Position numbers and translations under genes: made by a program. Shown here piece by piece: positions 18,585 through 62,995 of a DNA stretch of 64,000 nt (position 1 is its first letter; the number at the start of each line of letters is the position of its first letter). The notes below the pieces were generated by a model. That model did no database searches and was not told the DNA's origin. It saw nothing but the letters and a program-made list of their open reading frames with translations. The DNA is taken from sequence record MN091626.1. One strand, 5' to 3'.

Positions 18585-18596
18585 TATTTAGTTGTT
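18585..18596 (-). promoter_or_regulatory. Putative late promoter AACA-N6-TA
   Basis: AACA-ACTAAA-TA on minus strand upstream of CHAP gene. Confidence 0.65.
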
Positions 18597-18637
18597 CTTT
18601 TATAAAAATAATATGTTTCATAATAGTATAAAAATAA

Positions 18638-18674
18638 ATACCCTAACGAATCTTTAATATGATCGTTAGGGTAT
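18638..18674 (-). terminator. Terminator-like hairpin after amidase
   Basis: ATACCCTAACGA/TCGTTAGGGTAT stem. Confidence 0.6.
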
Positions 18675-18707
18675 ATAAAATTATAATTTAAATTATAGAA
18701 TCATTTA

Positions 18708-19658
18708 TTAGCTAAATGTTCCCCATGCTGGACCAATACGTTTACCGTTACCATTTGATTTACCTACTGGTACGTATACATATTGTCCCTTAAATTTACC
18801 TGAAACCCAAATATATCCGTTAAAATCTTGGATTTCATCATATTTAATAGTATCACCTTTAGACATACGAGGACCTTGAGGCCATCCAGTCCATGGACCA
18901 TTTTTACGAGTAATAATTCCTACAGATACACCACATTTGAAAGTAGCTTTTTCAGTTTTCCATAGAATACCTGCTGAATTACGTTTCCAAGTAGTTGAAG
19001 TTTCAGTACTTGTTTTCTTAGGTTTAGCAGGTGCTTTAGTTGTAGTAGTAGATTTAGTTGCTGTTGAAGTTTTAGCTGTAGAAGTAGCACCATTTTTCAT
19101 ATAAGTTAGAACCTTTTTATCTACATTAGAAACACTACGAGACATACCGCATGCAGCTAATAAATTGCCTGGATCTTGTTTGTCTGCTTGGATATCTTGA
19201 TGTCCTGGCATATTTGTACTTGCATTAATTTTATATTCTTTACATAAGAAAGCAAGAACACGACAATAGTTATCAAATGATTTTAATGAACGACTTCTAT
19301 TAGAGAAGTAACATCCTTCAACACCAATAGCGCCATCATTAGCATCAATACCATACCAAGAATTATCAGTAGGTGTATTGTACATAACATGCCATGCTTT
19401 TTCATCTAAAGGAACACAGATAATACATTCTTTATCATCAACAAAGATATGAGCTGATGCTGTATAGTTCCAATCAATATTATATGAATTACGATAGTAA
19501 TCAACATTATTTTGGGCAGTAGTGTTAGGGTTTCCTGTGTCATGAGCAACAATAAATTTAGGTCCGTTAAGCTTATCTCCAGCTCTACGAGTACCTATTG
19601 GTAAAAAATCAGTATAAACAGGAACACCGTTCCATGTACCGATATGTTTTTTAGCCAT
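18708..19658 (-). CDS. N-acetylmuramoyl-L-alanine amidase (Amidase_2) with SH3b domain
   Basis: IVAHDTGN, SAHIFVD, AWH, IGVE, GHQDI..DKQDPG; SH3b nearly identical to CHAP gene. Confidence 0.9.
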   Translation of the reverse strand: MAKKHIGTWNGVPVYTDFLPIGTRRAGDKLNGPKFIVAHDTGNPNTTAQNNVDYYRNSYNIDWNYTASAHIFVDDKECIICVPLDEKAWHVMYNTPTDNSWYGIDANDGAIGVEGCYFSNRSRSLKSFDNYCRVLAFLCKEYKINASTNMPGHQDIQADKQDPGNLLAACGMSRSVSNVDKKVLTYMKNGATSTAKTSTATKSTTTTKAPAKPKKTSTETSTTWKRNSAGILWKTEKATFKCGVSVGIITRKNGPWTGWPQGPRMSKGDTIKYDEIQDFNGYIWVSGKFKGQYVYVPVGKSNGNGKRIGPAWGTFS

Positions 19659-19705
19659 AATTAAATTTTCCTCCTTGAATTTATTACTAATTAAAGTAAT
19701 TTCTA

Positions 19706-19717
19706 TATTTAACTGTT
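19706..19717 (-). promoter_or_regulatory. Putative late promoter AACA-N6-TA
   Basis: AACA-GTTAAA-TA upstream of amidase. Confidence 0.65.
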
Positions 19718-19725
19718 CTATATTT

Positions 19726-22065
19726 TTAATACTTGATTTCTGTAGATACGATTAATTTATTTTGATATCTTCCACCTCTAGTGTAAACTTTACTATCAGT
19801 GTCACCTATATTAATACTATTTTCAGATCCATAAGCTATACATTCATCTAAGAATAAATTACCTCCTGATGAAGCTTGGAAGTCTTTTCCTTGATAACTT
19901 TCAAATGCGATACATCCTAAATTCCACGATTGTGTACCTTCATTTACATCAGCTACATTACCTCCATCATTTCTTCCATATATACCATTTATTCTAATGA
20001 TTTTTAAACCTTCATGAGTAGTTGATCCGTTATTTGATTTAACACCATTCAATCCTTTATCGGTTCCATTATCCATTCCTATACAATTAATCTCTATTAT
20101 ATTAGGTTTAGAACCATCAGCACCAATATGGTAATTTAAACCGTCAAAACTATTATAATTACCTTTACAGCTATCAAGAATAATATCTTTACCGCCAACA
20201 ATAGCAAGACCATTGTAACTTGAAGCAGAATGATAAAAATTACATTTCTTAAAGAATGTACTGTTATTTGAAGTTAAATTTAATTCAATGCAGTTTCTCC
20301 CGCCATATATATTTAAATTTTCAAAATATATATTTGAAGCTAAACTTGTTAACTGTATATTCGAAGAAGATATTAAAGGTATTACATTACTATTTGAAGG
20401 TTTATTATCATTAATATTGGAATAAACTTTAGTACCGTCAGTAAACCATGAATTAGGTGTACTTTCAACTTCATCAATACTACTTACTTTCTTTATATCA
20501 ATACTATTATCTAGCGTTACAACTTTATCGGTAGCAGATCTACTAAATTCATAAGTTCTATTTTTACCAGAAGTTAGTGTCCATGAAGGTTCATCAGCCA
20601 TAATAATATTCACATTATTACCTGTGCCTATTATATTAATGCTCTTATTAAATGCTTTTGTAATTAATGTGCCGCCAATTCTAAAATAGTTACCATCAGC
20701 AACCATAATTGTATCATTATCATTAACTTTAGGTATTACTACTTTAAAAGATTTAAATGGGTTTTCTTTAGATAAACCATCATTAGAATCATTACCATTA
20801 ACAGCATCTAAGTAGTAAGTAGTTCCGCCTGATAATCTATTAGTAGTTATATCATATTTCACTCCAAAAGTACCTTTTCCATCAGTAACAATTCTATTTT
20901 TTAATATTTCATTACCATAATTGAAATCATTAGGTTTTCTAACTGTTATTGGAAGGGTAGGTGCATAATTACCATCAAGACCGGGTAAACCTTGTAGACC
21001 TTGAGTTCCAATCTTACCTGTATCACCTTTTAATCCATTTAACTGTTCTTCAGTAAAATCAGAATACTCGAAAGGATCTCCCTTTTCACCTTTTAATAGA
21101 TCTAATTGTTCTTGAGTAAAATCGGAATATTCAAAAGGGCCACCTTTTTCACCTTTTAACTCGGATAATTGTTCTTGAGTAAAATCAGAATACTCGAAAG
21201 GATCTCCTTTTAATCCATTTAACTGTTCTTCAGTAAAATCAGAGTATTTGAAGGGGTCGCCTTTAGGACCTTGTATACCTGGATCACCTTTATACATCTC
21301 AGCATTTTCTACCATGTAATTCTTAAGATTTTCTTTGTAATCTAATAATTTATTTTCAAAATCATCTATTTTACTGTTAAATGAATCTTGTGCTAATTTT
21401 AATTCTTCAGATTTATCTTTTATAAGATTTAATTTTTCTTCAACTTTAACTACATCATTTTCCATATTCTTAACATAGTTTGTAGTCTCACTAAGTTTTT
21501 CCATTTCATCATTAAGACTCATTGTATTGTTATAATTACTATTGAATTGTTCTCTTACAGTTTCAAAATCAGTTAAAGTATCTTTCATGCTACTTAATTT
21601 ATTATTCATATCTTCTATTGTTGAAATTACATCTTCTTTTTCAGATTGTAAATCTAATTTTTTATCTTCAATACTATATTTAAAACTATCTAGCTCACTC
21701 AAATATGAATTAAGATTATCATCATCAATTAAATTTTCTTTGATTAAGTTAAGTTTTTCTCCTGCTTTTTCATTAATATTATTTATATCAGTAGATATTA
21801 TTTTTATTTGTTTAAAAGCCTCATTCACTTGAAGATATTTCTGTTTTATAAAATCTTCAATAGAGAAATAATCAGCTACGTCATATTCTCCATCTGAATT
21901 TAAATCAACATATTCATTTTTATTTACCTTTACATATTGAATATTCATTAAATCATAATAATCTAATGTATTTCTATCAACATAATAAGGTTTATTTATA
22001 GGTCCCATACCTTTACCTGGAATATAAGTTTTTTGAGGAACTATAATTAGTATACTATCTTCCAT
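19726..22065 (-). CDS. Putative fibre/appendage protein: shared N-module, coiled coil, collagen-like repeats, pectin-lyase-like beta-helix
   Basis: KGDPFxYSDFTxEQL repeats; YYLDAVNGNDSNDGLS..PFKS..DTIMVADGNY typical start of parallel beta-helix domains. Confidence 0.7.
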   Translation of the reverse strand: MEDSILIIVPQKTYIPGKGMGPINKPYYVDRNTLDYYDLMNIQYVKVNKNEYVDLNSDGEYDVADYFSIEDFIKQKYLQVNEAFKQIKIISTDINNINEKAGEKLNLIKENLIDDDNLNSYLSELDSFKYSIEDKKLDLQSEKEDVISTIEDMNNKLSSMKDTLTDFETVREQFNSNYNNTMSLNDEMEKLSETTNYVKNMENDVVKVEEKLNLIKDKSEELKLAQDSFNSKIDDFENKLLDYKENLKNYMVENAEMYKGDPGIQGPKGDPFKYSDFTEEQLNGLKGDPFEYSDFTQEQLSELKGEKGGPFEYSDFTQEQLDLLKGEKGDPFEYSDFTEEQLNGLKGDTGKIGTQGLQGLPGLDGNYAPTLPITVRKPNDFNYGNEILKNRIVTDGKGTFGVKYDITTNRLSGGTTYYLDAVNGNDSNDGLSKENPFKSFKVVIPKVNDNDTIMVADGNYFRIGGTLITKAFNKSINIIGTGNNVNIIMADEPSWTLTSGKNRTYEFSRSATDKVVTLDNSIDIKKVSSIDEVESTPNSWFTDGTKVYSNINDNKPSNSNVIPLISSSNIQLTSLASNIYFENLNIYGGRNCIELNLTSNNSTFFKKCNFYHSASSYNGLAIVGGKDIILDSCKGNYNSFDGLNYHIGADGSKPNIIEINCIGMDNGTDKGLNGVKSNNGSTTHEGLKIIRINGIYGRNDGGNVADVNEGTQSWNLGCIAFESYQGKDFQASSGGNLFLDECIAYGSENSINIGDTDSKVYTRGGRYQNKLIVSTEIKY
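21020..21270 (-). repeat. Four KGDPFxYSDFTxEQLxxL repeats (approximate bounds)
   Basis: Repeated AGTAAAATCAGAATACTCGAAAGGATCTCC-like units. Confidence 0.85.
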
Positions 22066-22102
22066 ACTATATTTCCACTCCTTTAAATTTGATCTGTAAA
22101 AT

Positions 22103-22183
22103 CCCCCTAATATATTTTTAAATCGATGATTATTCTATTCTTATAATTATTGGCTCATCGTTTAAAGTTATATATTAGGGGAA
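22103..22183 (-). promoter_or_regulatory. Long leader hairpin between late promoter and fibre gene
   Basis: CCCCTAATATA/TATATTAGGGG outer stem with inner AAATCGATGA/TCATCGTTT stem. Confidence 0.5.
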
Positions 22184-22225
22184 CTAATTTTAGTCGAAAA
22201 AACTAACGAAAATTAATTTTTATTA

Positions 22226-22237
22226 TATAATAATGTT
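22226..22237 (-). promoter_or_regulatory. Putative late promoter AACA-N6-TA
   Basis: AACA-TTATTA-TA upstream of 22065 gene. Confidence 0.55.
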
Positions 22238-25459: not shown

Positions 25460-25498
25460 ATATTCTCATTATCCTCACTTTCTTTATTAAATTTCGTA

Positions 25499-25510
25499 TA
25501 TGGTATTGTT
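25499..25510 (-). promoter_or_regulatory. Putative late promoter AACA-N6-TA
   Basis: AACA-ATACCA-TA. Confidence 0.65.
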
Positions 25511-25594: not shown

Positions 25595-26104
25595 TTAAAG
25601 ACCAAATTCTTTATCTAAAGATTCTTCTAAAGAACTAATATCTTCATTAGTTTGTTCTTCTTCTTTAACAGCTTCAAATAAGCTAAATAAAGCTTCTTCA
25701 ACAGGACTTACAACTGAATCAATTTTATTTTCCATAGCTTCATTTAATTTAGTAGGTAATTTTTTGAATAGAGCGATGTATTTCTTTTCATTATTTCTAG
25801 CCCAAGCTTCTGCTTTTTTAGGACTTTGGAAAGCACATACTCGAATAAAACGATTTAAAATAGATGTTTTACCTTTAGCATCAATTACTCTGTAAGTAAA
25901 TATAACTGTTCCATCTTCATGAGCATCTAAAGCAAATTCATTTTCATCAAATTTTTTACCTTTAGCGATAACTTTAGCTTTCTTTTTAGTAGCACGTGCT
26001 ATGAATTTTTCCTCTGTATCTTTATCAGAAGGGTTTACCATTTTTCTTAATGTATCCTTCACATTAGCTTCATTTAATAATGTTTCTTGTAAAAAATCTT
26101 CCAT
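25595..26104 (-). CDS. Putative internal head protein
   Basis: Acidic ends with LNEA/LEES motifs around a basic core; resembles 26146-26706. Confidence 0.55.
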   Translation of the reverse strand: MEDFLQETLLNEANVKDTLRKMVNPSDKDTEEKFIARATKKKAKVIAKGKKFDENEFALDAHEDGTVIFTYRVIDAKGKTSILNRFIRVCAFQSPKKAEAWARNNEKKYIALFKKLPTKLNEAMENKIDSVVSPVEEALFSLFEAVKEEEQTNEDISSLEESLDKEFGL

Positions 26105-26706: not shown

Positions 26707-26739
26707 TATATTTTCCTCATTTCTATTTATATTTATTAA

Positions 26740-26751
26740 TATTAATGTGTT
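26740..26751 (-). promoter_or_regulatory. Putative late promoter AACA-N6-TA
   Basis: AACA-CATTAA-TA. Confidence 0.6.
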
Positions 26752-27970: not shown

Positions 27971-29270
27971 CGATATCTTCAACAGAGATCGTAAATCTCT
28001 GCCAGTTCTCTTATGAACTTCTTTAAGATTTCCTTAAAGTCTAGACTATATCTTCACCCTATATTTTTATAGGGGATCACTATTTCGATTTAAGGGATTT
28101 TCACCCACTCCATTAACTTGAGCCCTACTCCTGTTGGTATATTTCAATACCCTAAGGGATAGTCGTTGAGCTTTTTCCTAGACAATTTTCGATTTTTTCT
28201 TTTATTTTTCCTTCTTTTTGATCTTTATAATTTATTCTTATCAGATCTAATTTTTCATGATTTTTGAAATAATCATCTTTTATTTTATCATTCTGTTTTA
28301 AGGTTTCGAATTTTTCTTTACCATTTTTATATCTAAAAGGTATAAAGTGCTGCTCACCGTCAAATTCTATACAAAGATTATATTCTTCTAAAAAGAAATC
28401 AACTCTTAAATGATTTCCTTTTATACTGAAAAGATCATCAAATTTCTTTTCTTTTTCATAAGGTATTTTCATATTATCCAAATATTCAGATATTTCTTTA
28501 GTACCTTTTGAATTACTAATATCACTACAATGAGGACAGCGATGTCCTGATGAATAAAAACTTTCCCAATTCATCTTAAATTCTCTTCCGCATTCTTCAT
28601 GTAAGATATCCATTTTAGTTCTACTATTAGAATATGAATTTGAGACTAATTCATAATCAAATTTTTCTATATAATCTTTTACTTCTTTAAGGTTTTTCCT
28701 TTTATTAGGTGCACAATGAGGACAACCATAACCCTGCTGAAGATTACTGTATGTTGATTTGAACTCATTCCCACATAAAGAATGAAATATTAATAATTTC
28801 TTTTTACTGTTTTCATATTCACTCTTTAAAATATAAACATCCTTACCATGTAAGTCATTTAATTTTTCTTGTACAACTTCATTATCAACTACTCTTCCTG
28901 CACACTTAGGACATTTATAACCTTTAATAAAATTTGATGGTGCTACATCATATACATAATTACATTTTTTATGTTTTAGTTTTAATTTATTTTTGTATAA
29001 TTCGAAATCCTTTATGAAAATATATTCATCATAATGTTTTAATCTCTCTTTACATTTCTTATGGTATTCTTCTTGTTTATTCAATTATTTCCAACCTTTC
29101 TTACGAAAAGCTTGTCTAGGAACTTAGTTGCTGATCATCCAATCTTAATGATTTTTAAGCATATCACGCTTACTGTTACCAGTTACGTTGTAGCTCATTA
29201 AGCTCTAAGGACTTCCCAGCAATTAAATGATTTTATTACATATACATTACTGTATAAGGGGACAAAATTT
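27971..29270 (-). mobile_element. Group I intron in RNAP beta gene (1300 nt)
   Basis: P1 GGGAU/GUCCC with U.G; P, Q, R GCTCAACGACTA, S AAGATATAGTCT; terminal G27971; splice yields HADSPRIGMTGTQAKH. Confidence 0.92.
28152..29084 (-). CDS. Intron-encoded homing endonuclease, three zinc-ribbon repeats plus Vsr-like (EDxHD-type) nuclease
   Basis: H..C...C.CP.C repeats; RVDFF..IEFDGEQH..NDKIK; ORF end overlaps intron R element. Confidence 0.8.
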   Translation of the reverse strand: MNKQEEYHKKCKERLKHYDEYIFIKDFELYKNKLKLKHKKCNYVYDVAPSNFIKGYKCPKCAGRVVDNEVVQEKLNDLHGKDVYILKSEYENSKKKLLIFHSLCGNEFKSTYSNLQQGYGCPHCAPNKRKNLKEVKDYIEKFDYELVSNSYSNSRTKMDILHEECGREFKMNWESFYSSGHRCPHCSDISNSKGTKEISEYLDNMKIPYEKEKKFDDLFSIKGNHLRVDFFLEEYNLCIEFDGEQHFIPFRYKNGKEKFETLKQNDKIKDDYFKNHEKLDLIRINYKDQKEGKIKEKIENCLGKSSTTIP

Positions 29271-32200
29271 ATCCCTATTCTTGGACTGTCTGCATGTCTA
29301 CTAGTATATGGGTTTAATAATTCTAATGGAGTGTATAAAGCTGTATCACTTACATCTTTTTTATTACCATCAGTATAACCACGAGTAGATTTAATCTGTG
29401 TATCATATGAAAGTTGTCTAACTATTCCCACCTTATTAGAATCGGGAGTAGATATTCCTAATATACCTTGCATACTTTCGTCATAAGAACGAATATCAGG
29501 TTCATATGATTGTTCAGAGTTACGTCCAGCAGGACCTTTAAATGTAACAGAAGTCATCTTATCTATTTCTAAGTTAGGGTTTAAATCAGAAACTTCATCT
29601 ACTGTAGGTTGTTCCATAATAGTTTTAATTAATTGGTCTTGTTTAACTGAAATATTCTTAGGATTTTTATTATTATAAGAATCTGAATATTCTTTATAAG
29701 CATTTGCCATCATTTTATACAATAATGCGTTAATTTGCTCTGGTCCACGTACACGATAAATTCCCATATCATTATGATCTCTAGCTGAAACGTCTTCTAA
29801 CATTGTATTAGCTAATAGTAATAATTCAACCATATTATCAGGAAGTTTTAAATCTCTTAATACTTCTTTAGTAATAGGATCCATTGCTAAATCCATAGTA
29901 TTTTTAATACCTTTACCAACATTACGACTGTAGAATTTATCATTGAAATATTCTAAGTAAGGTGTTTCAGTTTCAAAATCACTGAAATTGTATTGTGAAG
30001 TAGGTAATACAGTTAATCCAGACATTAATAAATCAAATCTTAATTTATCAGTAGAGTATATTAAATAACCGTCTTGGAATTTAATCTTATTCTTTTTATC
30101 ATGAATGCTAATTCTTTCATTCTCAGTAGTAAATTTATAATCAACTTCATAAAGATCAAGAATATTAGTTAAACCTTTATAGAAACCTAATAATAGAATT
30201 GTAGGTACTAATTTATTAGTAATTTTAACACGTGAAAATGCCATCGTCTTATTAGATTGAATATTCTTACTGAATTTCTTATCAATAACTCCAAAGTCAA
30301 CTTCATTATCTAGTTTATCAATAATGTAATCAAATATATTTACTTCCATAGATTTAATATTAGATTTACTACATTCATACATAACAGATTCTGTTTTGTC
30401 TGCTAATATTAATTTAGATTTATTAATATTATACCCGATAGGGAAATATTTATCTTGATCATAATCAATCTTAGATAAACTAGCACTATCAGAAATCATT
30501 CCTAATAAACTTCTTTGGTTGAATTCAAGTACATTAGTGCCATCTTGGAAATTTAATATATTTCTAGATAAACTATTATAAATAACTGAAGTTACGTATT
30601 TATTATTAATTAAAGAAGCATTACCTTTTTTAACAGATAGGTTAGATTTATTTTCAATATAATCTATAACTTGGTCATCTTCAATAACTTTCTTAATCCA
30701 TTCAGTTTCAGCATTTTCTTTATAACCGAATTTTTCTATAATGAATTTATTATAGTTAGTTGTAATCCAAACAGTATCAGGTTTATATTTAACGATTGGC
30801 CACATCATTAACTGTTTAGTTAATACTTTTTTACCGCCATTAAGTTTCATATATTTACCGTCAATAACTTTAGGTACATCAAATTTAACATTATGAGTTA
30901 AACCATCTGGACTTCTAAATTGGACTTTAACTGTATTTTTTAATGACTGACTATCTGAATTATCTTCAATATTCATTTTATTAATAAATACTGGAATATC
31001 TTCATTGTCATTAAAGCTTTTCATTATATCAATAAAGTCTTTATTAAATGTTTTTTGCATATAAGAAATATCAAAATCATTAGAAGCAATATTGTTAATA
31101 GTCTCTTCATTGATATTATTAATATTTTCATTAATTTCTCTATCGATTAATTTATCTTCAGAAAAACTAAAATCTTCTAAATCATTAAGGTATTCATCTT
31201 GTTTCTTAGATAAAGCTAATATCTTTTTAGTATTTTTAAGAGCTTCATCACCAATACTAGATTTATTTTTAATATTTCTCTTAATTGATTTAAATGAATC
31301 ATTCTTGTCTAATACGTCTGAATATAAAGTTTCAGTATCAATATCAATTAAATCTTTATTATCATTTAATTCTTTTTCAATTATCATAGCTATATTATAT
31401 TCATCATCAACATCCATTTCAGTATTGTCTAATGATCTAATATAACTTATTGTAGAATCTATTTTATTAGATATTTTTTCTAGCTGTTCATCATTTTCAT
31501 ATTCAACTTCATCATTCTGAGCTTCAATAGGGTCAATTGTACCTACATTATCAAATGCTTTCTTTTTAATTACTCCATCTACAGCTTCAGTATTATCATC
31601 ATCTTCAACTTTACTAATTTCATCAGTATCCAATGCCTGTGTATTAGTGTCAATCATTCTTCTTAATCTTTGTCTAAGTCTCATATTAAGTTTATTATAA
31701 TCTTTGTAATCAAATTTAAACATTATTCCATTATCTAATGAGACAAATAATAAATTAACATTTTGATTTTCACCATGAGGTAATTCTTCTTGATTCTTAA
31801 TCATCATGAATAAGCTTGACATGAAATCTTTTGTATTAGGTCTAATAGCTTGTTGAGAAGGTTTATTATACCCATCAACATTAATCACATAAAGTAAATT
31901 ATTGTAATCTTCTGTATTATTTAAAGAGTTAAAAGTTGATTTAACTGAATCTAATACTGTATTAAAGTTTTTAGTCATTAATGATTTATCTTCTAAATCA
32001 ATAAATTTAGTTGAATCAACAATATAGTTTCTACCTTTAAATAATTTCTCATTTCGTTCAACTCTATACTGTTTATAAGATTTAGATTTAATTTCTTTTT
32101 GATAATCTGTTATATTCGTTAATAATCTAGTTCTTCTATTTTGAGTTCTATACAATCTTGGTGTATAGATATTCTTGAAATTCTGATGATATAATAATCC

Positions 32201-32356
32201 ACTATTTAAGAAATCAGTAAATGAATTTTCTTTAAAACCTTTATAAATAACTAACTGGTCTTTTTTCTTATCTTTGATTTCTTCATCAATAGCTTTAATT
32301 TTATATCCAGATATTGAATAGAATTTAAGATTTTTTAATCTATTAAGATATTTCAA
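29271..32356 (-). CDS. RNA polymerase beta subunit (probably virion RNAP), exon 1; spliced product 1417 aa
   Basis: YMKLNGGKKV, YRVRGPE, FKGPAG, STPDSNKVGIVRQL, HADSPR; size like phiKZ gp178. Confidence 0.88.
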
Positions 32357-32816
32357 TTATGCCATTCCTTTCCGTATTTAATTTTATTGATTAATATATT
32401 TATATTACTTTTATTTTATAATATTATTCAATAAATTTCCTATATACAATAGTTTTGATTACTATCATTATGTATTTTAATTGGATTTATAAAAATAAAA
32501 TAACGAACTATGTGAGTTATTTTTAAATACATTTTTATGAAATAAAAATGTGTACTATCCCCTCATAATATTTTAATTTATATAAATATACTATAAGAAT
32601 AGTATATTTATTATTATAATATTTTATTATAATATAATTATAATATTCCGGACACTTTCAAATTTTTTATCACATAATGGTACAAATTTATAATTTTTTA
32701 AATAATTAATATAAAAATATTTATTAACTTCATACATATTGTTTAATTATATAAAAATTATAAAATACTCAGTAACATCTAAATATCAATAAAATAATGA
32801 AAGAAGTGAAAATAAA
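32357..32816. other. Extremely AT-rich divergent intergenic region between two RNAP genes
   Basis: 460 bp, ATAAATATACTAT/ATAGTATATTTAT palindrome near 32582-32611, repeated TATAAT units. Confidence 0.5.
32774..32785 (+). promoter_or_regulatory. Putative late promoter AACA-N6-TA
   Basis: AACA-TCTAAA-TA upstream of 32817. Confidence 0.65.
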
Positions 32817-36275: not shown

Positions 36276-36276
36276 T

Positions 36277-39834: not shown

Positions 39835-39878
39835 AGATTTAATACCTTCTTTCCAATTTTCTTTTATCTATATTAATA

Positions 39879-39890
39879 TAATTAAATGTT
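39879..39890 (-). promoter_or_regulatory. Putative late promoter AACA-N6-TA
   Basis: AACA-TTTAAT-TA. Confidence 0.55.
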
Positions 39891-42802: not shown

Positions 42803-43357
42803 ATGGCAACTAAAATAGATTTTAATAATGAAGACGATTATAATGATGTATTAAATATAAATGATTGGAACAGGCTATGTATGGACTTCTGTATTAGATC
42901 TGCTAGTATTAGTAAATGTGCTGCCAAACAAGTTAGTTCAATTGTAGCTGATAAAGATTCTATATTCTCTCTTGGAGTAAATGGTTCTTTTCCGGGTAAA
43001 CTAAATTGTAATGAAATATTTAAAAAAGAAGATGGAATTTGGTACGTAAAAGATCTTAATGAAGAAACTAATTTAATTGAATGGGTTAAATGTGAAGATC
43101 AAGAACAACATCATAAATGGTCTTTATTAAATGAAGTTCATGCTGAAATAAATGCTTTATCTAAAATGAATAAAAAAGGTATTTCTACTGAAGGGTTAGA
43201 CTTATATTGTACTCACTCACCATGTTATAATTGTGCTAAAAGTATAATTGCTGCTGGAATTAAAAATGTCTATTTTAATGAATTATATGATGGTTATGAA
43301 GATGTTATGGAATTATTAGTTTCAAATAATGTTAACTTCATTAAAGTGGAGGTCTAG
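42803..43357 (+). CDS. dCMP deaminase
   Basis: HAEINAL and PCYNC zinc motifs. Confidence 0.9.
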   Translation: MATKIDFNNEDDYNDVLNINDWNRLCMDFCIRSASISKCAAKQVSSIVADKDSIFSLGVNGSFPGKLNCNEIFKKEDGIWYVKDLNEETNLIEWVKCEDQEQHHKWSLLNEVHAEINALSKMNKKGISTEGLDLYCTHSPCYNCAKSIIAAGIKNVYFNELYDGYEDVMELLVSNNVNFIKVEV

Positions 43358-46464: not shown

Positions 46465-46504
46465 TATTAATTTTCACCGTTCTTTCATTATCATTATTTA
46501 AGTA

Positions 46505-46516
46505 TAAATGCTTGTT
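46505..46516 (-). promoter_or_regulatory. Putative late promoter AACA-N6-TA
   Basis: AACA-AGCATT-TA. Confidence 0.65.
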
Positions 46517-51893: not shown

Positions 51894-51899
51894 TTTATT

Positions 51900-51913
51900 A
51901 AATATATATTATA
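51900..51913 (+). promoter_or_regulatory. Putative early promoter
   Basis: AAATATATATTATA. Confidence 0.6.
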
Positions 51914-51969
51914 TAAATGATAAATAATACTTATTTATCATAATTATTATTTAAGGAGAGTGCCTGATA

Positions 51970-53703
51970 TTGGATAAAGTTAAAGAATTAGAGTACAAAG
52001 AGGATTTAGATTTAAAAAAGATTGATGAATTAGTTAATAATGACGTGGAAGTACCCCTATTATCTAGTAATGTCAATAAGCTTAAAAGAGTCTCTGGTAA
52101 TTTTGAATTAACTAATGAATACATTAATTCTAAAGACTTAGATACACTTGAAAGAAAAAATAAAAATGGTAAAATTGAATTGGAGTACATACAGAGAACA
52201 GATATTCTACCATTAGTTAAATTTATTGAAAGTGAAAAGAATGATACTATATTTATAGATTTCAATAAGATATTAGAAACTGATAATCGTAAAGTACCTA
52301 AGGATGAAGAGTTTGATAATATATTTACTATTCAAATTAAACAAAGATCTTACAAGAGTATTTTAGATTATATTGTAAATGATATGAATTTTATAGTTAA
52401 TGAGATTCCTCACATAATGATTAAAGGTGCTACTATATTAAGTAAGATAGCTAAATTAAGAGAGAATTATAAAGAAGAAGATTTCTTCAGAGATATTCAG
52501 AATATTATTGAAGATGAAGATTTAAGAAATGTTATTAGAAATATTGTTGATAATAACTATACAATTAATTTAGATCAAACTAATGCTGAAGCTATGTTAC
52601 AAAGTAAGAAAGTTATTAAGAGAGATTTACAGGTAACTGACCAAGTAAATAAATCATTCTTATCTACAGCTGTAATGCAAAGATTTATTATTCCGTTTAT
52701 TAGTCAATATTATGTAACTACTAATAAGTATCATTGTGAAAATTCTGATGCAGATAAGGAAAGAACTAAAAACGGTTACTTTAAAGCATTTAATTATTGT
52801 ATGTGTATTTCTTCATTCGATTATAATGTAAGTAATAATAATAAACTTTATAAAATTGTAGAACCTAAAGTAATTAAAACAAAATACAATGATAGAGTTA
52901 TTTGGAGATTCTTAGATTTACGTTCAATTGACCCTGACACTGTTATTAATAAAATAATGGATAAAATCATTAGACAAATTGTATGTAAATTATTAGTAGA
53001 TACTTCTGCAGTATCTTACTTTACGTCTGTTATTAAATTCTCAATCGATTATGAATTCCAGTACAAATATCCAATTAAGTTTAGATCAATACGTCTATCT
53101 ACAGATGATGACGATGATGAAGATAGCTTCGATAAATTCCAAATGAATAACTTCCATAAAGTTAATGAACGTTTAGATTTAGCTAATAAAATCACTATTG
53201 ATAGATTTATTAATGAACGTTTAGAAGAATTAAATATTAGTGATGATTACATTAATCGTTTATATGATAAATTTGATTATATTAATGACTTACAATCTCA
53301 TTTAATTAAAGTTTATTTTGCTGAATACTTTAACGTTAATACAAATGATAGAAAGAGCATTGTTTCATTACTGGCTATTATGTCTAAAGAACTTATTGAT
53401 AATAATATGGAAACTTTAGGAAAAATAGTAGCAAGTAAAGTTGTTTCAGGTACAAAAGCTAAAAATGTAGGCAAATTATCATTAGACGTAATTGCAGATA
53501 AATATTATATTGCTGCTTGGGATAAATATAGATTTATCAATGATATTACTGAAAAAGATAACTTTATCTTACGTATAGCATTAGTAAATGGTTATTCATT
53601 TAACTTTACTCCTGAAGATAAAGAAGAAGATGAAGAAGTTATTGCTGATATTGATAAGAAATACTTTATCTCTGAAGTATCACAATTTATTTCTCAATAC
53701 TAA
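51970..53703 (+). CDS. Candidate sigma-like promoter-specificity subunit of non-virion RNAP
   Basis: SYFTSVIKFSI (sigma 2.3/2.4-like), RLSTDDDDDEDSFDKF (sigma-finger-like); two genes from chaperonin; early promoter. Confidence 0.5.
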   Translation: MDKVKELEYKEDLDLKKIDELVNNDVEVPLLSSNVNKLKRVSGNFELTNEYINSKDLDTLERKNKNGKIELEYIQRTDILPLVKFIESEKNDTIFIDFNKILETDNRKVPKDEEFDNIFTIQIKQRSYKSILDYIVNDMNFIVNEIPHIMIKGATILSKIAKLRENYKEEDFFRDIQNIIEDEDLRNVIRNIVDNNYTINLDQTNAEAMLQSKKVIKRDLQVTDQVNKSFLSTAVMQRFIIPFISQYYVTTNKYHCENSDADKERTKNGYFKAFNYCMCISSFDYNVSNNNKLYKIVEPKVIKTKYNDRVIWRFLDLRSIDPDTVINKIMDKIIRQIVCKLLVDTSAVSYFTSVIKFSIDYEFQYKYPIKFRSIRLSTDDDDDEDSFDKFQMNNFHKVNERLDLANKITIDRFINERLEELNISDDYINRLYDKFDYINDLQSHLIKVYFAEYFNVNTNDRKSIVSLLAIMSKELIDNNMETLGKIVASKVVSGTKAKNVGKLSLDVIADKYYIAAWDKYRFINDITEKDNFILRIALVNGYSFNFTPEDKEEDEEVIADIDKKYFISEVSQFISQY

Positions 53704-55008: not shown

Positions 55009-55020
55009 AACATTCACTTA
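55009..55020 (+). promoter_or_regulatory. Putative late promoter AACA-N6-TA
   Basis: AACA-TTCACT-TA. Confidence 0.65.
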
Positions 55021-55055
55021 TAATAATAAGTATCGGGAAGTCGGTGAATTAAAAA

Positions 55056-59050: not shown

Positions 59051-59145
59051 AGGGAATCTCCACTTCCTTTCTAGGAGTTAATCCAAATATAATAAAATAA
59101 TAAATGAAACCTACACGCTAATATAAATTTTCATTTTATATTTTA

Positions 59146-59157
59146 TAAATTTTTGTT
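59146..59157 (-). promoter_or_regulatory. Putative late promoter AACA-N6-TA
   Basis: AACA-AAAATT-TA. Confidence 0.6.
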
Positions 59158-59227: not shown

Positions 59228-60697
59228 TTAACGTTTTAATAATTTTTCAAGCATTTCTGAAGTTAAATCTTTTTGATTATTCTTAACTTTGTAAGCACCA
59301 AGTTTATTTTCTTTAATAACTTCAAATTTGTTATGATCTGGTAAATATTTATAAACTAATTCCCTAGTTTGGTCTAATATAATAAAATCTAATAAGAAGA
59401 ATTCATTATAAATTTTCTTAGCAGCTCTACGGTCAGATAATAAATCCACACCAGTTTTACGTTTAACTTCATTAGCTTCATCAATAGTAATCATTAAAGC
59501 TGTTGTTGGAATATAGTTAGCTTTAGCTGATTTAGCAATTCCTGAAGCTTTATTAACAGAGTAGAGAGAATTTAATTTGTTCCAAATAGAACCAGAACGT
59601 CCTTTTTTAGAGTCTTGTGCAATTTTCTTAACTTTATCAGCGTCCAATAATAAATCTTTAACTAGACGTAATTCACCTGTAGTAAATTTAACTAATTTAG
59701 TTACTAAGTTTGAGCCACGAGATTTATCAGAAAGATAGAAAATGATGTCTTCAGTTTTAACAACATGAACTACTGTCTTAACACCGAATTTAGTATCCTT
59801 CTGAATATAATTTGAAGCTGGAAGAGGATTACCATTTTTATCTGCAGGTACATAGTTAATTGTAGTTGTTATCGTAGTAGGTAAAGAAGCATTTATTTTT
59901 TCTTTATCTATAGTAACTTTTGCTCCAAAATTATCTCTTTCTGCATCTTTAATAGTAGTAGTAACTTGACCTTTATAATCTTCACTGAATTTTCTTTTTA
60001 ATTCAGAATTTTTTTCTATAGTGTCGCCATTACTTGATTTTAATCTACCGTCAAATACTGAATTTATATTTCTATTAGAACTTTCTGACATATTATTAAA
60101 TTTAAATTCTTTCTCTTTACCATCTTTAAATTCAAGTATTTCTAAATTATAAGTTTTATTTGTATTCTTTGATAATTCAAAATCATTTATATCAAATCTA
60201 ATATCATATTTTACACCATTGGCTTTTACTGCATAACCGCTATTTGATTCATTTAATAGTTCTTTCATTTCTTCTCTAGTGATAGTCATATCATTTAAAG
60301 AATTCATATTAAATTTTTCTTCAGGAGTTTCTAATAAATAATCATTGGATCTTTTAATATCCTCTTTTGTACTTTCAGCTAAATTTACATTATTATGCAA
60401 ATCAGACATAAATGAAGTAGGATCTTTCGGATCAAAAGTTTGTAACGGTGAATTCGTTAATACAAAATCAAACTCAAAAGCTCTCTCTAATTCTAATTGG
60501 TTTCTCATTAATTCAACTGTGTCTTGTTCTATAGTATCAGATGTAACTAAAGGAAACTGTAGTATAAAATCTCCAGATCTTTGCTTTAATGATCTTTTTC
60601 TTTTGTTATTATCTTTATAGTTTTTACTTATACTTGTAGGATTTAAATCTTTTAAAAGACCTATTACATCCGTAAATAAGTTTACTTTATTGGCCAA
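59228..60697 (-). CDS. Putative virion structural protein
   Basis: 489 aa, late promoter. Confidence 0.6.
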   Translation of the reverse strand: MANKVNLFTDVIGLLKDLNPTSISKNYKDNNKRKRSLKQRSGDFILQFPLVTSDTIEQDTVELMRNQLELERAFEFDFVLTNSPLQTFDPKDPTSFMSDLHNNVNLAESTKEDIKRSNDYLLETPEEKFNMNSLNDMTITREEMKELLNESNSGYAVKANGVKYDIRFDINDFELSKNTNKTYNLEILEFKDGKEKEFKFNNMSESSNRNINSVFDGRLKSSNGDTIEKNSELKRKFSEDYKGQVTTTIKDAERDNFGAKVTIDKEKINASLPTTITTTINYVPADKNGNPLPASNYIQKDTKFGVKTVVHVVKTEDIIFYLSDKSRGSNLVTKLVKFTTGELRLVKDLLLDADKVKKIAQDSKKGRSGSIWNKLNSLYSVNKASGIAKSAKANYIPTTALMITIDEANEVKRKTGVDLLSDRRAAKKIYNEFFLLDFIILDQTRELVYKYLPDHNKFEVIKENKLGAYKVKNNQKDLTSEMLEKLLKR

Positions 60698-60733
60698 TTT
60701 ATATTTCCGCCTTTCTTTTTCTTATTATTTTTA

Positions 60734-60745
60734 TAAAGATATGTT
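60734..60745 (-). promoter_or_regulatory. Putative late promoter AACA-N6-TA
   Basis: AACA-TATCTT-TA. Confidence 0.65.
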
Positions 60746-61285: not shown

Positions 61286-61287
61286 CC

Positions 61288-61303: not shown

Positions 61304-61346
61304 AAAAATTATTTACAAAAAAAAAGAAGAATCTTGAGATTCTTCT

Positions 61347-61877
61347 TTATCTATAAAAATTTGGATTAGTCATACTTTCTCGTATTTGTTCTACAAACTC
61401 ATCCTTCGAGTCACTAATGACACGAGCTTTTCCTTTTCTTTTATAAGGATTAGAAACAGAAATCGATACATCTTTTTCTTTAGCTTTGAAAGATATCATT
61501 GAGTTAGCTTCATAAAATAGTTTATTATGATTCATTCTATTTATATGTCCCCAACTATAACCATTTCTTTTTAAATAATATTTGGCTTTTTGATAGTCAG
61601 ACATTACATCTTTATTAAATTGTTCTTTATCTAAACCTTCTTCTTTCATAAAATTATCTTTTTTATTTTTTAGTTCTTTTTCTTTTTCATTAATTTTACG
61701 AATTTCTTCTTTCTTTTTCTCTTCTTCTATTTTTATTTTTTGAATTCTTTCTCTTTCTATTTCTTCTGCTTTTTTAATTCTTATTCTTTCTCTTTCTATT
61801 TCTTCTTCAATTTTTCTTTGTTTTTTCATTTTTCTATCATTTCTGATTTCTTTAATTTTATTTAACATACTATCCAT
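61347..61877 (-). CDS. Hypothetical coiled-coil protein, paralog of 62430-62882
   Basis: YQKAKYYLKRNGYSW..RMN..LFYEANS. Confidence 0.75.
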   Translation of the reverse strand: MDSMLNKIKEIRNDRKMKKQRKIEEEIERERIRIKKAEEIERERIQKIKIEEEKKKEEIRKINEKEKELKNKKDNFMKEEGLDKEQFNKDVMSDYQKAKYYLKRNGYSWGHINRMNHNKLFYEANSMISFKAKEKDVSISVSNPYKRKGKARVISDSKDEFVEQIRESMTNPNFYR

Positions 61878-61899
61878 CCTTTATTATTTTATTTATTAA

Positions 61900-62415
61900 T
61901 TAAACTAATAATCCTTTTGAAATAATTATTTCAAAATAAATTCTATCAAATTCAGGTTCTCCTTTTTTATTATAAATTACAAATGGGTATTTAATATCTC
62001 TAATATATCCATTATCAAGTAAATAGCTATTTTCCAGTTTCATCTTTTTAATTTTCTTTTCTAATTTATTTCTACTAAATTTTGTCAAATTTAAATCAAA
62101 TTTATAAAATTGTGTGTTACCTGCTGTATAGTAAAGATTTTCATATTTATCTATTGCAAATAATTTTCCAGTAAATCCTACAACTTTCTTAGTTTTTGTT
62201 TTTACATCTTCAATATTTAAATATTCTAATTCTCTACCAATGCAATTTAATTCTTTATCAGCTAAATCGTTAAAATCTTTAATATAATTATCTTTCTCTT
62301 GTTTTAAAATTTTATTTAAATCCATAAAGACATCAATTTTAAATTTTTCATCTTCAAAAAGTTTAAATTCTCTTACACTATTTTCTTTTTCAATTACAGT
62401 TATTCTTTTACTCAT
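61900..62415 (-). CDS. Hypothetical protein
   Basis: AAGGA SD, 171 aa. Confidence 0.75.
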   Translation of the reverse strand: MSKRITVIEKENSVREFKLFEDEKFKIDVFMDLNKILKQEKDNYIKDFNDLADKELNCIGRELEYLNIEDVKTKTKKVVGFTGKLFAIDKYENLYYTAGNTQFYKFDLNLTKFSRNKLEKKIKKMKLENSYLLDNGYIRDIKYPFVIYNKKGEPEFDRIYFEIIISKGLLV

Positions 62416-62429
62416 ATTAATCCATCCTT

Positions 62430-62882
62430 TTATTTTTTTAATTTTTCTTCTAGTTCTTTTATTCGTTTATTTAAATACATAGCTTCTTTTATAGTTTCTA
62501 TTTTTACATTTTCTTTCCTAGCTTTATATTCAACTAATGAATTTGCTTCTAAAAATATCTTATAATTATTCATTCTTTTTAAATCGGACCAATTAAATCC
62601 ATTTCTTAAAAGATATTGTTTAGCTTCTTGGTAATCAATATTTTCAGATCTATCAAAATATGATTTAATTAGACCTTCTTTTTCTAAGAAAGCTTTTGTT
62701 GCTTTTTCTCTAGCTTTCCTTTCAGATTCAACTCTTTCATTAAATTTAAGAAGTTCTTCTTTTTCTCTCTCTTCTTCTTTAATTCTTATTCTTTCTCTTT
62801 CTTTTTCTTCTTTAATTCTTTTTTCTTTTGCTTCTTTTCTATTTTGTCTAAATAATACAATTTCCTCTAATAACATTAACAT
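62430..62882 (-). CDS. Hypothetical coiled-coil protein, paralog of 61347-61877
   Basis: YQEAKQYLLRNGFNW..RMN..IFLEANS. Confidence 0.75.
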   Translation of the reverse strand: MLMLLEEIVLFRQNRKEAKEKRIKEEKERERIRIKEEEREKEELLKFNERVESERKAREKATKAFLEKEGLIKSYFDRSENIDYQEAKQYLLRNGFNWSDLKRMNNYKIFLEANSLVEYKARKENVKIETIKEAMYLNKRIKELEEKLKK

Positions 62883-62983
62883 TTTAAATACATCCTTTTT
62901 ATTTAAATTAGTTGATTAATAATTATCAACTTCATAATTATAATATAAATTTATAAATTAATTTATTACGGAAAATCTACTTT

Positions 62984-62995
62984 AACATAGTCTTA
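62984..62995 (+). promoter_or_regulatory. Putative late promoter AACA-N6-TA
   Basis: AACA-TAGTCT-TA. Confidence 0.65.

What the first reader, a model, noticed from the sequence alone, without database searches (positions are those of the whole stretch)
18585..62995. AR9-type late promoter AACA-N6-TA at 12 virion-type transcription units; hints at uracil-DNA-dependent transcription
Seen: exact AACA-N6-TA on the coding strand shortly upstream of 12 genes (18585, 19706, 22226, 25499, 26740, 32774, 39879, 46505, 55009, 59146, 60734, 62984), largely lysin, structural and virion-RNAP genes. Established: this is the late consensus of Bacillus phage AR9, whose non-virion RNAP reads deoxyuridines in the template strand of its dU-substituted genome. 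A dCMP deaminase (dUMP supply) is in the window. Inference: this phage may have dU DNA and the same template-strand recognition.
Basis: partly seen in the sequence, partly recalled or inferred. Interest (0 to 1): 0.75.

Follow-up and report, generated by a model that had tools for sequence, protein, structure and literature searches.

The report
AR9-type late promoters, Staphylococcus jumbo phage
The twelve short motifs are very probably real late-gene promoters of the Staphylococcus jumbo phage PALS_2, read by the phage's own RNA polymerase as in Bacillus phage AR9; the uracil-DNA idea was already in the literature, but this promoter map appears to be new for this phage group.

Summary
The window is the last 64 kb of Staphylococcus phage PALS_2 (100% identity), 98% identical to phage S6, whose DNA is reported to carry uracil for thymine. 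All 12 coordinates are correct.

As written, AACA-N6-TA is not enriched in the window (56 matches against 88 expected). The real signal is AACA-N6-TAT:
- The window holds 15 copies.
- Genome-wide, the spacing is strictly 6 and the predicted start sits about 38 nt before the start codon.
- AACA and TAT are 94-100% conserved in diverged relatives, while the spacer and flanks are 53-60% identical.
- The motif is purged from coding DNA on both strands (7 and 2 copies against 44 and 34 expected).

The window also encodes the AR9 gp226-type specificity subunit, with the uracil-selecting valine conserved, behind an AR9-type early promoter. Downstream genes are lysins, tail fibre, virion proteins and a virion-polymerase piece.

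Verdict: real, well supported, and a new member of a known kind. Uracil DNA for PALS_2 was already proposed. The "dCMP deaminase" is more likely a dCTP deaminase. Start sites and uracil dependence remain untested.

The parts
18584..18596 (-). Predicted late promoter AACA-N6-TAT; predicted +1 = A at 18585. It lies 43 nt before the endolysin gene 17745-18542 and directly after a terminator-like hairpin.
   Evidence: AACA and TAT are conserved in MarsHill, SA1 and Machias while the spacer differs in Machias. The downstream gene is an endolysin. The SA1 ortholog ORF211 is classed late.
19705..19717 (-). Predicted late promoter; +1 at 19706, 48 nt before the amidase/endolysin gene 18708-19658.
   Evidence: SA1 ORF212 is classed late.
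22225..22237 (-). Predicted late promoter; +1 at 22226, 161 nt before the tail-fibre gene 19726-22065. It sits 8 nt after the stop of the upstream gene and before a conserved ~90-nt hairpin in the leader.
   Evidence: The motif and its flanks are identical in all four phages, although the genes are only 55-61% identical. Hairpin. Tail fibre. This is the least certain of the 12 as a promoter for that gene.
25498..25510 (-). Predicted late promoter; +1 at 25499, 40 nt before the virion structural protein gene 24191-25459 (followed by 22245-24170).
26739..26751 (-). Predicted late promoter; +1 at 26740, 34 nt before 26146-26706 (unknown function; followed by 25595-26104).
   Evidence: Conserved in SA1; the orthologous region was not recovered in Machias or MarsHill.
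32774..32786 (+). Predicted late promoter; +1 at 32785, 32 nt before the TTG start of the virion RNAP beta' piece 32817-34043.
   Evidence: PHROG RNA polymerase subunit. MarsHill annotates it as viral RNA polymerase beta-prime. SA1 ORF223 is classed late.
39878..39890 (-). Predicted late promoter; +1 at 39879, 45 nt before 39151-39834 (AR9 g242 homolog, one of the proteins exclusive to uracil-DNA phages).
   Evidence: AR9 g242 has a mapped late promoter with a 32-nt UTR. Exclusivity list.
46504..46516 (-). Predicted late promoter; +1 at 46505, 41 nt before the Zn-finger endonuclease gene 45733-46464 (followed by the guanylate-kinase-like gene 45096-45656 and others).
   Evidence: SA1 ORF235 is classed late.
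55009..55021 (+). Predicted late promoter; +1 at 55020, 36 nt before the TTG start of 55056-56330 (AR9 g218 homolog, exclusive to uracil-DNA phages).
59145..59157 (-). Predicted late promoter; +1 at 59146, 96 nt before the virion structural protein gene 58019-59050.
60733..60745 (-). Predicted late promoter; +1 at 60734, 37 nt before the TTG start of the virion structural protein gene 59228-60697; follows a hairpin plus a T-run.
   Evidence: By my numbering the SA1 ortholog is ORF248, which that study classed as middle.
62984..62996 (+). Predicted late promoter; +1 at 62995, 32 nt before the TTG start of the virion structural protein gene 63027-63995. The unit runs on past the end of the record into PALS2_001.
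51970..53703 (+). Gene for the sigma-like promoter-specificity subunit of the non-virion RNAP (AR9 gp226 homolog, PALS2_268); the proposed reader of the motif.
   Evidence: E 3.2e-40 to PDB 7S01_A. In an 8-phage alignment Val206, Trp208, Asp204, Tyr202 and Phe259 are invariant. Residue roles come from PMC9209446.
51900..51919 (+). AR9-type early promoter (AAATATATATTAT-N6-G) in front of the gp226-homolog gene.
   Evidence: AR9 g226 has an annotated early promoter at the same place.
6752..8665 (+). Non-virion RNAP beta' piece (PALS2_228), preceded by an early-type promoter at 6693-6712.
   Evidence: MarsHill annotation; early motif.
42803..43357 (+). Zinc deaminase, probably a dCTP deaminase (Dcd) that supplies dUTP.
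   Evidence: Pfam dCMP_cyt_deam_1, 1.2e-16. [quoted passage not shown]
29198..32356 (-). Virion RNAP beta gene, 5' exon (3' exon at 26803-27807; the intron carries ORF 28152-29084). It has no exact late motif upstream, only AACT-N6-TAT 87 nt before the start.
   Evidence: MarsHill joined CDS.

Best explanation
The 12 sites are late promoters of phage PALS_2, recognised by the phage's own non-virion multisubunit RNA polymerase.

Proposed sequence of events:
1. The injected virion RNAP transcribes early genes from AAATATATATTAT-N6-G promoters. These genes include the non-virion RNAP pieces and the sigma-like gp226 homolog encoded in this window.
2. The resulting holoenzyme then binds AACA-N6-TAT.
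3. By analogy with AR9, it reads the complement 3'-UUGU-5' at -11 to -8 in the melted template strand.
4. It flips the -10 base into a pocket made by the gp226 2.1bis helix (Val, Ile) and an Arg of the beta-N piece. A thymine methyl does not fit this pocket.
5. It starts at the A of TAT.

The products are mRNAs with leaders of about 30-50 nt for lysins, tail fibre, virion proteins and the virion RNAP that must be packaged.

Shown here: the motif, its position, spacing, conservation and avoidance; the homologous polymerase parts; the conserved contact residues; the early/late split of promoter types.

Inferred: the start site, the late timing in PALS_2 itself, dU in PALS_2 DNA, and uracil dependence.
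For: Position and specificity:
- Window: 12 of 15 AACA-N6-TAT copies lie in leading intergenic strands against 2.2 expected, and 0 in non-leading strands.
- Genome, de novo dyad scan: AACA-N6-TAT observed 30, expected 7.7, p 7.6e-10; 1 copy in non-leading strands.
- With TAT placed 25-50 nt before a start codon, AACA ranks 1 of 256 tetramers at gap 6 (24 hits). Gaps 3, 4, 5, 7, 8 and 9 give 0, 3, 0, 4, 1 and 6. The third element is TAT 24 times; the next best occurs 4 times.
- The median distance to the start codon is 38 nt, and 23 of 29 sites lie at 26-48 nt. AR9 UTRs are mostly 17-60 nt.

Conservation: against Machias, identity is 0.95 for AACA and 0.94 for TAT, but 0.53 for the spacer and 0.57-0.60 for the flanks. 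Pooling SA1 and Machias gives Fisher p 1.8e-18.

Avoidance: under synonymous-codon permutation the motif occurs 7 times against 43.6 expected on the sense strand and 2 against 33.5 on the antisense strand (z about -6.7 for both). Other gaps, tetramers and third elements stay at ratios of about 0.7-1.1; N7 is also depleted. The same holds in SA1 and Machias.

Trans factor: the gp226 homolog matches at E 3e-40, with Val206 and other contacts conserved. The beta-N piece keeps Arg363.

Promoter classes: eight AR9-type early promoters in the window sit before a disjoint gene set that includes the nvRNAP genes.

Timing: the SA1 orthologs of five downstream genes are late in RNA-seq.

Host promoters: none of the 12 regions holds a sigmaA-like -35/-10.

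dU DNA.
Against: - There are no 5'-end data for any Staphylococcus jumbo phage, so the start sites are only predicted.
- Only about 31-34 exact sites exist genome-wide. AR9 has 94 consensus promoters and SA1 has 103 late genes. Many late genes, such as virion RNAP beta at 29198-32356, GroEL and the baseplate cluster, have no exact motif.
- Site 22226 lies upstream of a strong conserved hairpin.
- The SA1 ortholog of 59228-60697 was classed as middle.
- In the beta-N piece, AR9 Lys375 aligns with Asn (a Lys sits next to it) and Asn382 aligns with Gly. The pocket is therefore not identical to AR9's.
- No uracil-DNA-glycosylase inhibitor is detectable.
Confidence: 0.8

Rival explanations
1. The sites are promoters for the host sigmaA RNA polymerase, with TAT(A/T)A(A/T) acting as a -10 box.
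For: Several sites continue as TATAAT- or TATAAA-like sequence, and the DNA is very AT-rich.
Against: None of the 12 regions holds a -35/-10 pair with 16-18 spacing and at most 2 mismatches. The conserved upstream element lies 6 nt, not 17 nt, from TAT, and that spacing is strict. The phage encodes both RNAPs and the matching specificity subunit.
Confidence: 0.04
2. The motif acts on RNA as a processing, stability or translation signal in the leader, not as a promoter.
For: It sits at a fixed distance of about 38 nt from start codons. Some leaders carry conserved structure.
Against: The motif is purged just as strongly from the antisense strand of genes (2 copies against 33.5 expected), which is not normally transcribed. 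This points to a signal read on DNA in either orientation. Several sites follow terminator hairpins, so they are placed to begin new transcripts. The motif equals the experimentally mapped AR9 promoter.
Confidence: 0.05
3. The 12 sites are chance matches of a loose pattern in AT-rich intergenic DNA.
For: AACA-N6-TA as written is under-represented overall, 56 matches against 88 expected. AT-rich spacers produce many TA dinucleotides.
Against: The strand split is 12 to 0, with 2.2 expected and a maximum of 9 in 2000 shuffles. The motif ranks first among 256 tetramers only at gap 6. The footprint gives p 1.8e-18. Coding avoidance gives z about -6.7 on both strands.
Confidence: 0.01
4. They are nvRNAP late promoters, but recognition in this phage does not depend on uracil. 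Either the DNA is not fully dU-substituted, or the pocket tolerates thymine.
For: Two of the three AR9 beta-N residues named at the promoter pocket are not conserved. No UDG inhibitor was found. PALS_2 DNA has not been analysed chemically, and its authors do not mention uracil.
Against: Val206, whose change to Gly makes AR9 accept T, is invariant in all 8 homologs, and Ile207, Ser245, Tyr246, Lys262 and Tyr263 are kept in PALS_2. S6, 98% identical, is reported as U-DNA. Dcd and Dtm homologs are present. gp226 homologs occur only in known or presumed dU phages, in 21 records.
Confidence: 0.12

Closest known systems
Late promoters of Bacillus phage AR9/PBS1, read by the five-subunit non-virion RNAP with gp226 (Lavysh 2017, Sokolova 2017, Fraser 2022)
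   Same: - The AACA tetramer, the same 6-nt spacer and T-A at -1/+1.
- Short leaders.
- The same gene classes: virion, lysis and virion-RNAP genes.
- A homologous split beta/beta' polymerase and sigma-like subunit with the U-selecting valine.
- The same AT-rich early promoter before the nvRNAP genes.
   Different: - The third element here is TAT (24 of 45 AACA-N6 sites at 25-50 nt; no other triplet exceeds 4, and TG starts are rare). In AR9 TAT is about equal to TAA, and TGA and TAG are also used.
- Far fewer exact sites: about 33 against 94.
- Much stronger purging from coding DNA: ratio 0.06-0.16 against 0.64-0.88 in AR9.
- The gp226 homolog is 113 residues longer at the N-terminus and about 29% identical.
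- Lys375 and Asn382 of the beta-N piece are not kept.
- No Ugi.
Listeria grayi jumbo phage LPJP1 (presumed dU DNA)
   Same: It has a gp226 homolog (32% identity). Upstream of its genes AACA-N6 is followed by TAT 14 times against at most 3 for any other triplet. It therefore shares the TAT form of the consensus.
   Different: Coding avoidance is weak (ratios 0.74 and 0.54). Only 100 kb was examined, and no promoters have been published for it.
phiKZ non-virion RNAP late promoters (TATG, G = +1) with gp68
   Same: It has a homologous split RNAP with a fifth subunit related to gp226, and a very short promoter next to the start site.
   Different: Thymine DNA, a different consensus, no AACA element and no uracil requirement.
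Phage T4 late promoters (TATAAATA at -10, gp55 with host RNAP)
   Same: A minimal AT-rich late promoter without a -35 element.
   Different: T4 uses the host core polymerase and non-template-strand recognition. It has no conserved AACA at a fixed spacing. This comparison rests on general knowledge and was not tested here.

Membership tests
AR9-type late (nvRNAP) promoter | Non-template consensus AACA-(6N)-T-A/G with a strict 6-nt spacer | tested here: met
   All 12 sites match. At gap 6 AACA gives 24 hits; other gaps give 0-6. De novo p 7.6e-10. Consensus from PMC5312081 and PMC5449584.
AR9-type late (nvRNAP) promoter | Lies upstream of late, virion or lysis genes with a short 5' UTR | tested here: met
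   Median distance 38 nt. PHROGs functions. AR9 UTRs.
AR9-type late (nvRNAP) promoter | Transcription starts at the A/G seven nt after AACA | not testable with these tools
   No 5'-end data are held. The SA1 RNA-seq paper gives no read-level data.
AR9-type late (nvRNAP) promoter | Downstream genes are expressed late | tested here: inconclusive
   The SA1 orthologs of five downstream genes are named as late and one as middle. Full per-gene tables are not held, and there are no data for PALS_2 itself.
AR9-type late (nvRNAP) promoter | The phage encodes the nvRNAP core pieces and the gp226-type specificity subunit | tested here: met
   gp226 homolog E 3.2e-40; beta-C E 4.9e-143; beta-N E 2.9e-73 to the chains of PDB 7S00/7S01. 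The beta' piece is annotated in MarsHill.
AR9-type late (nvRNAP) promoter | [quoted passage not shown] | not testable with these tools
   Only indirect evidence: Val206 is invariant; Ile207, Ser245, Tyr246, Lys262, Tyr263 and beta-N Arg363 are kept; Tyr210 becomes Phe and Phe261 becomes Tyr; beta-N Lys375 becomes Asn and Asn382 becomes Gly.
PBS1/AR9-type uracil-DNA phage | Thymidine replaced by deoxyuridine in virion DNA | not testable with these tools
   Reported for S6, which is 98.2% identical over 94% of a 21-kb query. PALS2 was proposed as a U-DNA phage in PMC10303552.
PBS1/AR9-type uracil-DNA phage | Dcd-type deaminase that supplies dUTP | tested here: met
   Window 42803-43357: Pfam PF00383, 1.2e-16. 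The protein is named among the closest Dcd_PBS1 homologs. Its substrate has not been assayed.
PBS1/AR9-type uracil-DNA phage | dTMP phosphatase (Dtm, PF06941 type) | tested here: met
   tblastn of AR9 g151 hits PALS_2 186538-187137 (PALS2_197, outside the window) at 36% identity, E 3.4e-33.
PBS1/AR9-type uracil-DNA phage | Ugi-type uracil-DNA-glycosylase inhibitor | tested here: not met
   The best tblastn E-value for AR9 Ugi is 7.7. Published searches and assays also found none in the Staphylococcus jumbo phages.
PBS1/AR9-type uracil-DNA phage | No thymidylate synthase or dUTPase | not tested
   None is annotated in the PALS_2 record. No profile search of all 279 proteins was run.

The most novel reading that the evidence does not exclude
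In the Staphylococcus (and Listeria) branch the non-virion polymerase may read a tighter, essentially sufficient 7-base code, AACA-N6-TAT, with a required T at +2 and A-only starts. If every copy fires, that would explain why the genome has removed 84-94% of the copies expected in coding DNA on both strands. This purge is about five times stronger than in AR9, where the code was defined. Such a code would be a minimal, orthogonal, uracil-gated promoter and a clear case of promoter-driven shaping of codon choice.
Probability: 0.4. Interest if true: 0.55.

Novelty: new member of a known kind. Interest (0 to 1): 0.4.

Why it matters
It supplies the late-promoter map that the comparative genomics paper on these phages said MEME could not find. 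No paper in the searched library reports such a map.

It extends the template-strand, uracil-reading promoter system from Bacillus phages to phages of Staphylococcus, and apparently of Listeria.

It gives 12 sites in the window, and about 33 in the genome, that can be tested directly by TSS mapping or in vitro transcription.

It also corrects several start codons and helps define transcription units in phages that are being considered for use against S. aureus.

The concept itself (dU DNA, gp226, AACA-N6-TA/G) is established, so the advance is incremental.

Tried and rejected
- Raw motif enrichment: rejected. AACA-N6-TA is depleted window-wide.
- TGAA-N3-GAT, the top dyad of the de novo scan: it is not a promoter but a conserved spacer between the Shine-Dalgarno site and the start codon.
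- Host sigmaA promoters: none at the 12 sites.
- Rfam: only the tRNA-Asn matched, and the tail-fibre leader hairpin matched no known RNA family.
- Supplement of the SA1 transcriptome paper: it holds only primers and figures, with no per-gene classes or 5' ends.
- DC4 virion proteome: only 15 proteins, too few to test enrichment of virion genes.
- A late motif for the virion RNAP beta gene: only an AACT variant, conserved in SA1 but not in Machias.
- Promoters for the RNase H-deaminase unit and the baseplate/GroEL cluster: none recognised.
- Ugi homolog: none.
- The Uchiyama 2014 paper on S6 is not held, so it is cited second-hand.
Full report
IDENTITY. The window is the last 64,000 nt of Staphylococcus phage PALS_2 (MN091626.1, 268,748 nt; 100% identity). 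A 21-kb stretch of it is 98.2% identical to phage S6 and 94-96% identical to MarsHill and Madawaska, and it matches SA1, Machias, PB50 and AH12 at 82-85% (annotation). GC content is about 25%. I held the whole genome as loci L003-L007 plus the window. I called 283 genes with a simple ORF and Shine-Dalgarno rule. In the window this recovers 57 of the 60 annotated stop codons.

OBSERVATION. All 12 coordinates and strands appear in the exhaustive list of AACA-N6-TA matches, and each site lies on the coding strand upstream of a gene. The pattern as written is not over-represented: the window has 56 matches against 88 +/- 9 in dinucleotide shuffles. All 12 sites, however, continue with T, giving AACA-N6-TAT. 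The window holds only 15 copies of this 7-base code on both strands. None lie in the 5.7 kb of non-leading intergenic strand, and three lie in 57 kb of coding DNA. Shuffling the leading regions gives 2.18 +/- 1.49 copies, with a maximum of 9 in 2000 trials.

GENOME-WIDE SPECIFICITY. I enumerated 58,930 dyads (tetramer, gap 2-10, trimer) without prior assumptions on all leading intergenic strands. AACA-N6-TAT ranks tenth, with 30 observed against 7.65 expected (p 7.6e-10) and one copy on non-leading strands. The higher-ranked dyads are ribosome-binding or start-codon contexts, terminator stems and parts of the early promoter. I then required a TAT whose A lies 25-50 nt before a start codon. Under that condition AACA is the most frequent of all 256 tetramers at gap 6 (24 hits, 9.4-fold over its local frequency), while gaps 3, 4, 5, 7, 8 and 9 give 0, 3, 0, 4, 1 and 6 hits. 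With AACA-N6 fixed, the next three bases are TAT 24 times, and no other triplet occurs more than 4 times. Across 29 sites the median distance to the start codon is 38 nt, and 23 sites fall at 26-48 nt. Outside AACA and TAT there is little information. The genome holds 42 copies in all. Thirty-one are intergenic, and at least three of the "coding" copies sit at a gene end or in a doubtful small ORF just upstream of a gene start.

PHYLOGENETIC FOOTPRINT. For 11 sites I anchored orthologous upstream regions in MarsHill, SA1 and Machias on the N-terminus of the downstream protein and aligned them. Against Machias, identity is 0.95 for AACA and 0.94 for TAT, but 0.53 for the six spacer bases and 0.57-0.60 for the flanks. 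In SA1 the motif columns are 0.97-1.00. Pooling SA1 and Machias, motif columns are identical in 149 of 154 cases and the other columns in 721 of 1078 (Fisher p 1.8e-18). The twelfth site (22226) is identical in all four phages, although the tail-fibre proteins are only 55-61% identical.

AVOIDANCE. I permuted synonymous codons within each gene. AACA-N6-TAT occurs 7 times on the sense strand against 43.6 expected, and twice on the antisense strand against 33.5 expected (z about -6.7 for both). Controls with gaps 3, 4, 5, 8 or 9, with permuted tetramers, or with TAA, TAG, TAC, TGT or AAT as the third element stay at ratios of about 0.7-1.1. Only N7 (0.3) and AACT-N6-TAT (0.5) are also depleted. 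SA1 and Machias show the same depletion (ratios 0.12-0.43). Purging from the strand that is not normally transcribed argues for a signal read on DNA in either orientation, that is, a promoter, rather than an RNA signal.

THE READER OF THE MOTIF. Window 51970-53703 encodes a 577-residue protein that matches AR9 gp226, the sigma-like specificity subunit of the non-virion RNAP (PDB 7S01_A, E 3.2e-40). Fraser et al. (PMC9209446) assign these roles in AR9:
- The -10 uracil is wedged between gp226 Ile207 and beta-N Arg363.
- Val206 excludes the thymine methyl, and the V206G change lets the enzyme accept T.
- Tyr210 stacks on -9G, and the main chain of 261-263 binds it.
- Ser245 and Tyr246 hold the non-template AACA.
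In PALS_2 these positions read Val, Ile, Phe (for Tyr210), Ser, Tyr, Tyr (for Phe261), Lys and Tyr. In an eight-phage alignment (AR9, BpSp, four Staphylococcus phages, LPJP1, phiR1-37) Val206, Trp208, Asp204, Tyr202 and Phe259 are invariant. The beta-C and beta-N pieces are PALS2_067 and PALS2_088 (E 4.9e-143 and 2.9e-73 to the 7S00 chains). Arg363 is kept, but Lys375 aligns with Asn (a Lys sits next to it) and Asn382 aligns with Gly. gp226 homologs occur in only 21 phage records, all from known or presumed uracil-DNA phages of Staphylococcus, Bacillus, Listeria and Yersinia.

TWO PROMOTER CLASSES. Eight exact copies of the AR9 early consensus (A-W-A-T-W-TATATTAT-N6-G) lie in the window. Their gene set is disjoint from the late set and includes both non-virion RNAP genes of the window: 6693-6712 before the beta' piece and 51900-51919 before the gp226 homolog. 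AR9 g226 has an annotated early promoter in the same place. [quoted passage not shown] None of the 12 late sites has a sigmaA-like -35/-10 pair.

DOWNSTREAM GENES AND TIMING. The first genes downstream are two endolysins, the tail fibre, four PHROG "virion structural proteins", a virion-RNAP beta' piece, a Zn-finger endonuclease and three proteins of unknown function. Two of the unknowns, and PALS2_001 reached from site 62984, belong to the small set of proteins reported as exclusive to uracil-DNA phages. In the SA1 RNA-seq study the two lysins, the virion RNAP subunits and the endonuclease are late and the non-virion RNAP genes are middle. The ortholog of 59228-60697 is classed as middle. AR9 g242, the ortholog of 39151-39834, has a mapped late promoter.

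URACIL DNA. The secondary sources held here state that S6 DNA has thymine fully replaced by uracil. The MarsHill group behaves like U-DNA in restriction digests and PCR. A 2023 paper proposes PALS2 and SA1 as uracil-DNA phages and reports no detectable Ung inhibitor in this group. [quoted passage not shown] I also found a homolog of the AR9/PBS1 dTMP phosphatase at PALS_2 186538-187137 (36% identity, E 3e-33) and no Ugi homolog. The RNase H-deaminase unit has no recognisable promoter of its own, only a terminator hairpin upstream.

CALIBRATION AND DIFFERENCES FROM AR9. The same scripts run on 100 kb of AR9 recover AACA at gap 6 (33 hits against 2-3 at gaps 4, 5 and 7). There the third element is TAT 11, TAA 10, TGA 5 and TAG 4, and coding avoidance is weak (ratios 0.64-0.88). 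In 100 kb of Listeria phage LPJP1 the third element is TAT 14 times against at most 3 for any other triplet, with weak avoidance. The Staphylococcus phages therefore share the AR9 code, but with T fixed at +2 and almost only A starts. They have fewer exact sites (about 33 against 94 in AR9) and a far stronger purge from genes.

CAVEATS.
- No start sites have been mapped.
- Many late-type genes lack an exact motif.
- Site 22226 lies 8 nt after a stop codon and before a conserved 90-nt hairpin, so it may serve another purpose or feed a structured leader.
- Uracil dependence is inferred from residue conservation and from relatives only.

VERDICT. The dU hypothesis and the shared mechanism were already published, and I found no report of a late-promoter map for this phage group in the searched library. 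This makes it a new member of a known kind, of moderate interest.

Noticed in passing
Genome-wide; in the window e.g. 6742, 34189, 37140, 39999 (+): About 30 genes, mostly behind early-type promoters, share an extended translation-initiation region, GGAG-(A/G)-TGAA-NNN-GATA(A)-ATG. The spacer between the Shine-Dalgarno site and the start codon is conserved, not just the Shine-Dalgarno site. Genes behind late motifs lack it.
   Followed up: partly
window 22066-22225 (-): The 161-nt leader of the tail-fibre gene holds a ~90-nt nested hairpin (CCCCTAATATAT...ATATATTAGGGGG around AAACGATGA...TCATCGATTT). It is conserved in four phages with compensatory changes (alifold -26.7). It lies downstream of late motif 22226 and matches no Rfam family. 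It could be a terminator, an attenuator or a stabilising leader.
   Followed up: partly
window 32817, 55056, 63027, 51970, 51120 (+): Several GenBank start codons look too far downstream. Conserved TTG starts with a Shine-Dalgarno site lie 9-96 nt upstream. MarsHill annotates the longer forms, and they restore the usual 32-36 nt promoter-to-start distance.
   Followed up: partly
window 1439-3357 (+): The family-B DNA polymerase piece is annotated as 2350-3357, preceded by an HNH homing endonuclease ORF (1439-1891). In MarsHill the corresponding polymerase gene is one uninterrupted 574-residue ORF. PALS_2 therefore appears to carry a mobile insertion in or next to this gene.
   Followed up: no
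window 26803-32356 (-): By comparison with MarsHill, the virion RNAP beta gene is split into two exons (29198-32356 and 26803-27807). The intron carries ORF 28152-29084. Machias has four exons and a homing endonuclease here.
   Followed up: no
PALS_2 record 186505-187224 (L006:36505-37224), outside the window: PALS2_197, annotated as hypothetical, is a homolog of AR9 g151 5'(3')-deoxyribonucleotidase, the PBS1 dTMP phosphatase Dtm (36% identity, E 3e-33). This is a likely thymidine-depletion enzyme that is not annotated in this phage.
   Followed up: partly
window 39151-39834 (-), 55056-56330 (+), 63027 onward into PALS2_001; also PALS2_144: Four of the six protein families reported as exclusive to uracil-DNA phages sit directly behind, or in units led by, AACA-N6-TAT motifs. 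They are therefore predicted to be late and possibly virion proteins.
   Followed up: no
window 51120-53703 (+); L012, L013, L014, L015: The gene pair gp227-homolog then gp226-homolog is syntenic in AR9, BpSp, LPJP1, phiR1-37 and PALS_2. In LPJP1 the gp226 homolog is annotated as two ORFs.
   Followed up: no
window 42082-42187 (+): The RNase H-deaminase unit is preceded only by a strong terminator hairpin plus a T-run about 25 nt before its TTG start, with no early or late motif. Expression may depend on read-through from the early promoter at 39932.
   Followed up: no
window 4046 (+), 13332 (-), 58276 (-): These are the only three AACA-N6-TAT copies inside genes in the window, two sense and one antisense. 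They are candidates for internal or antisense late promoters like those mapped in AR9.
   Followed up: no
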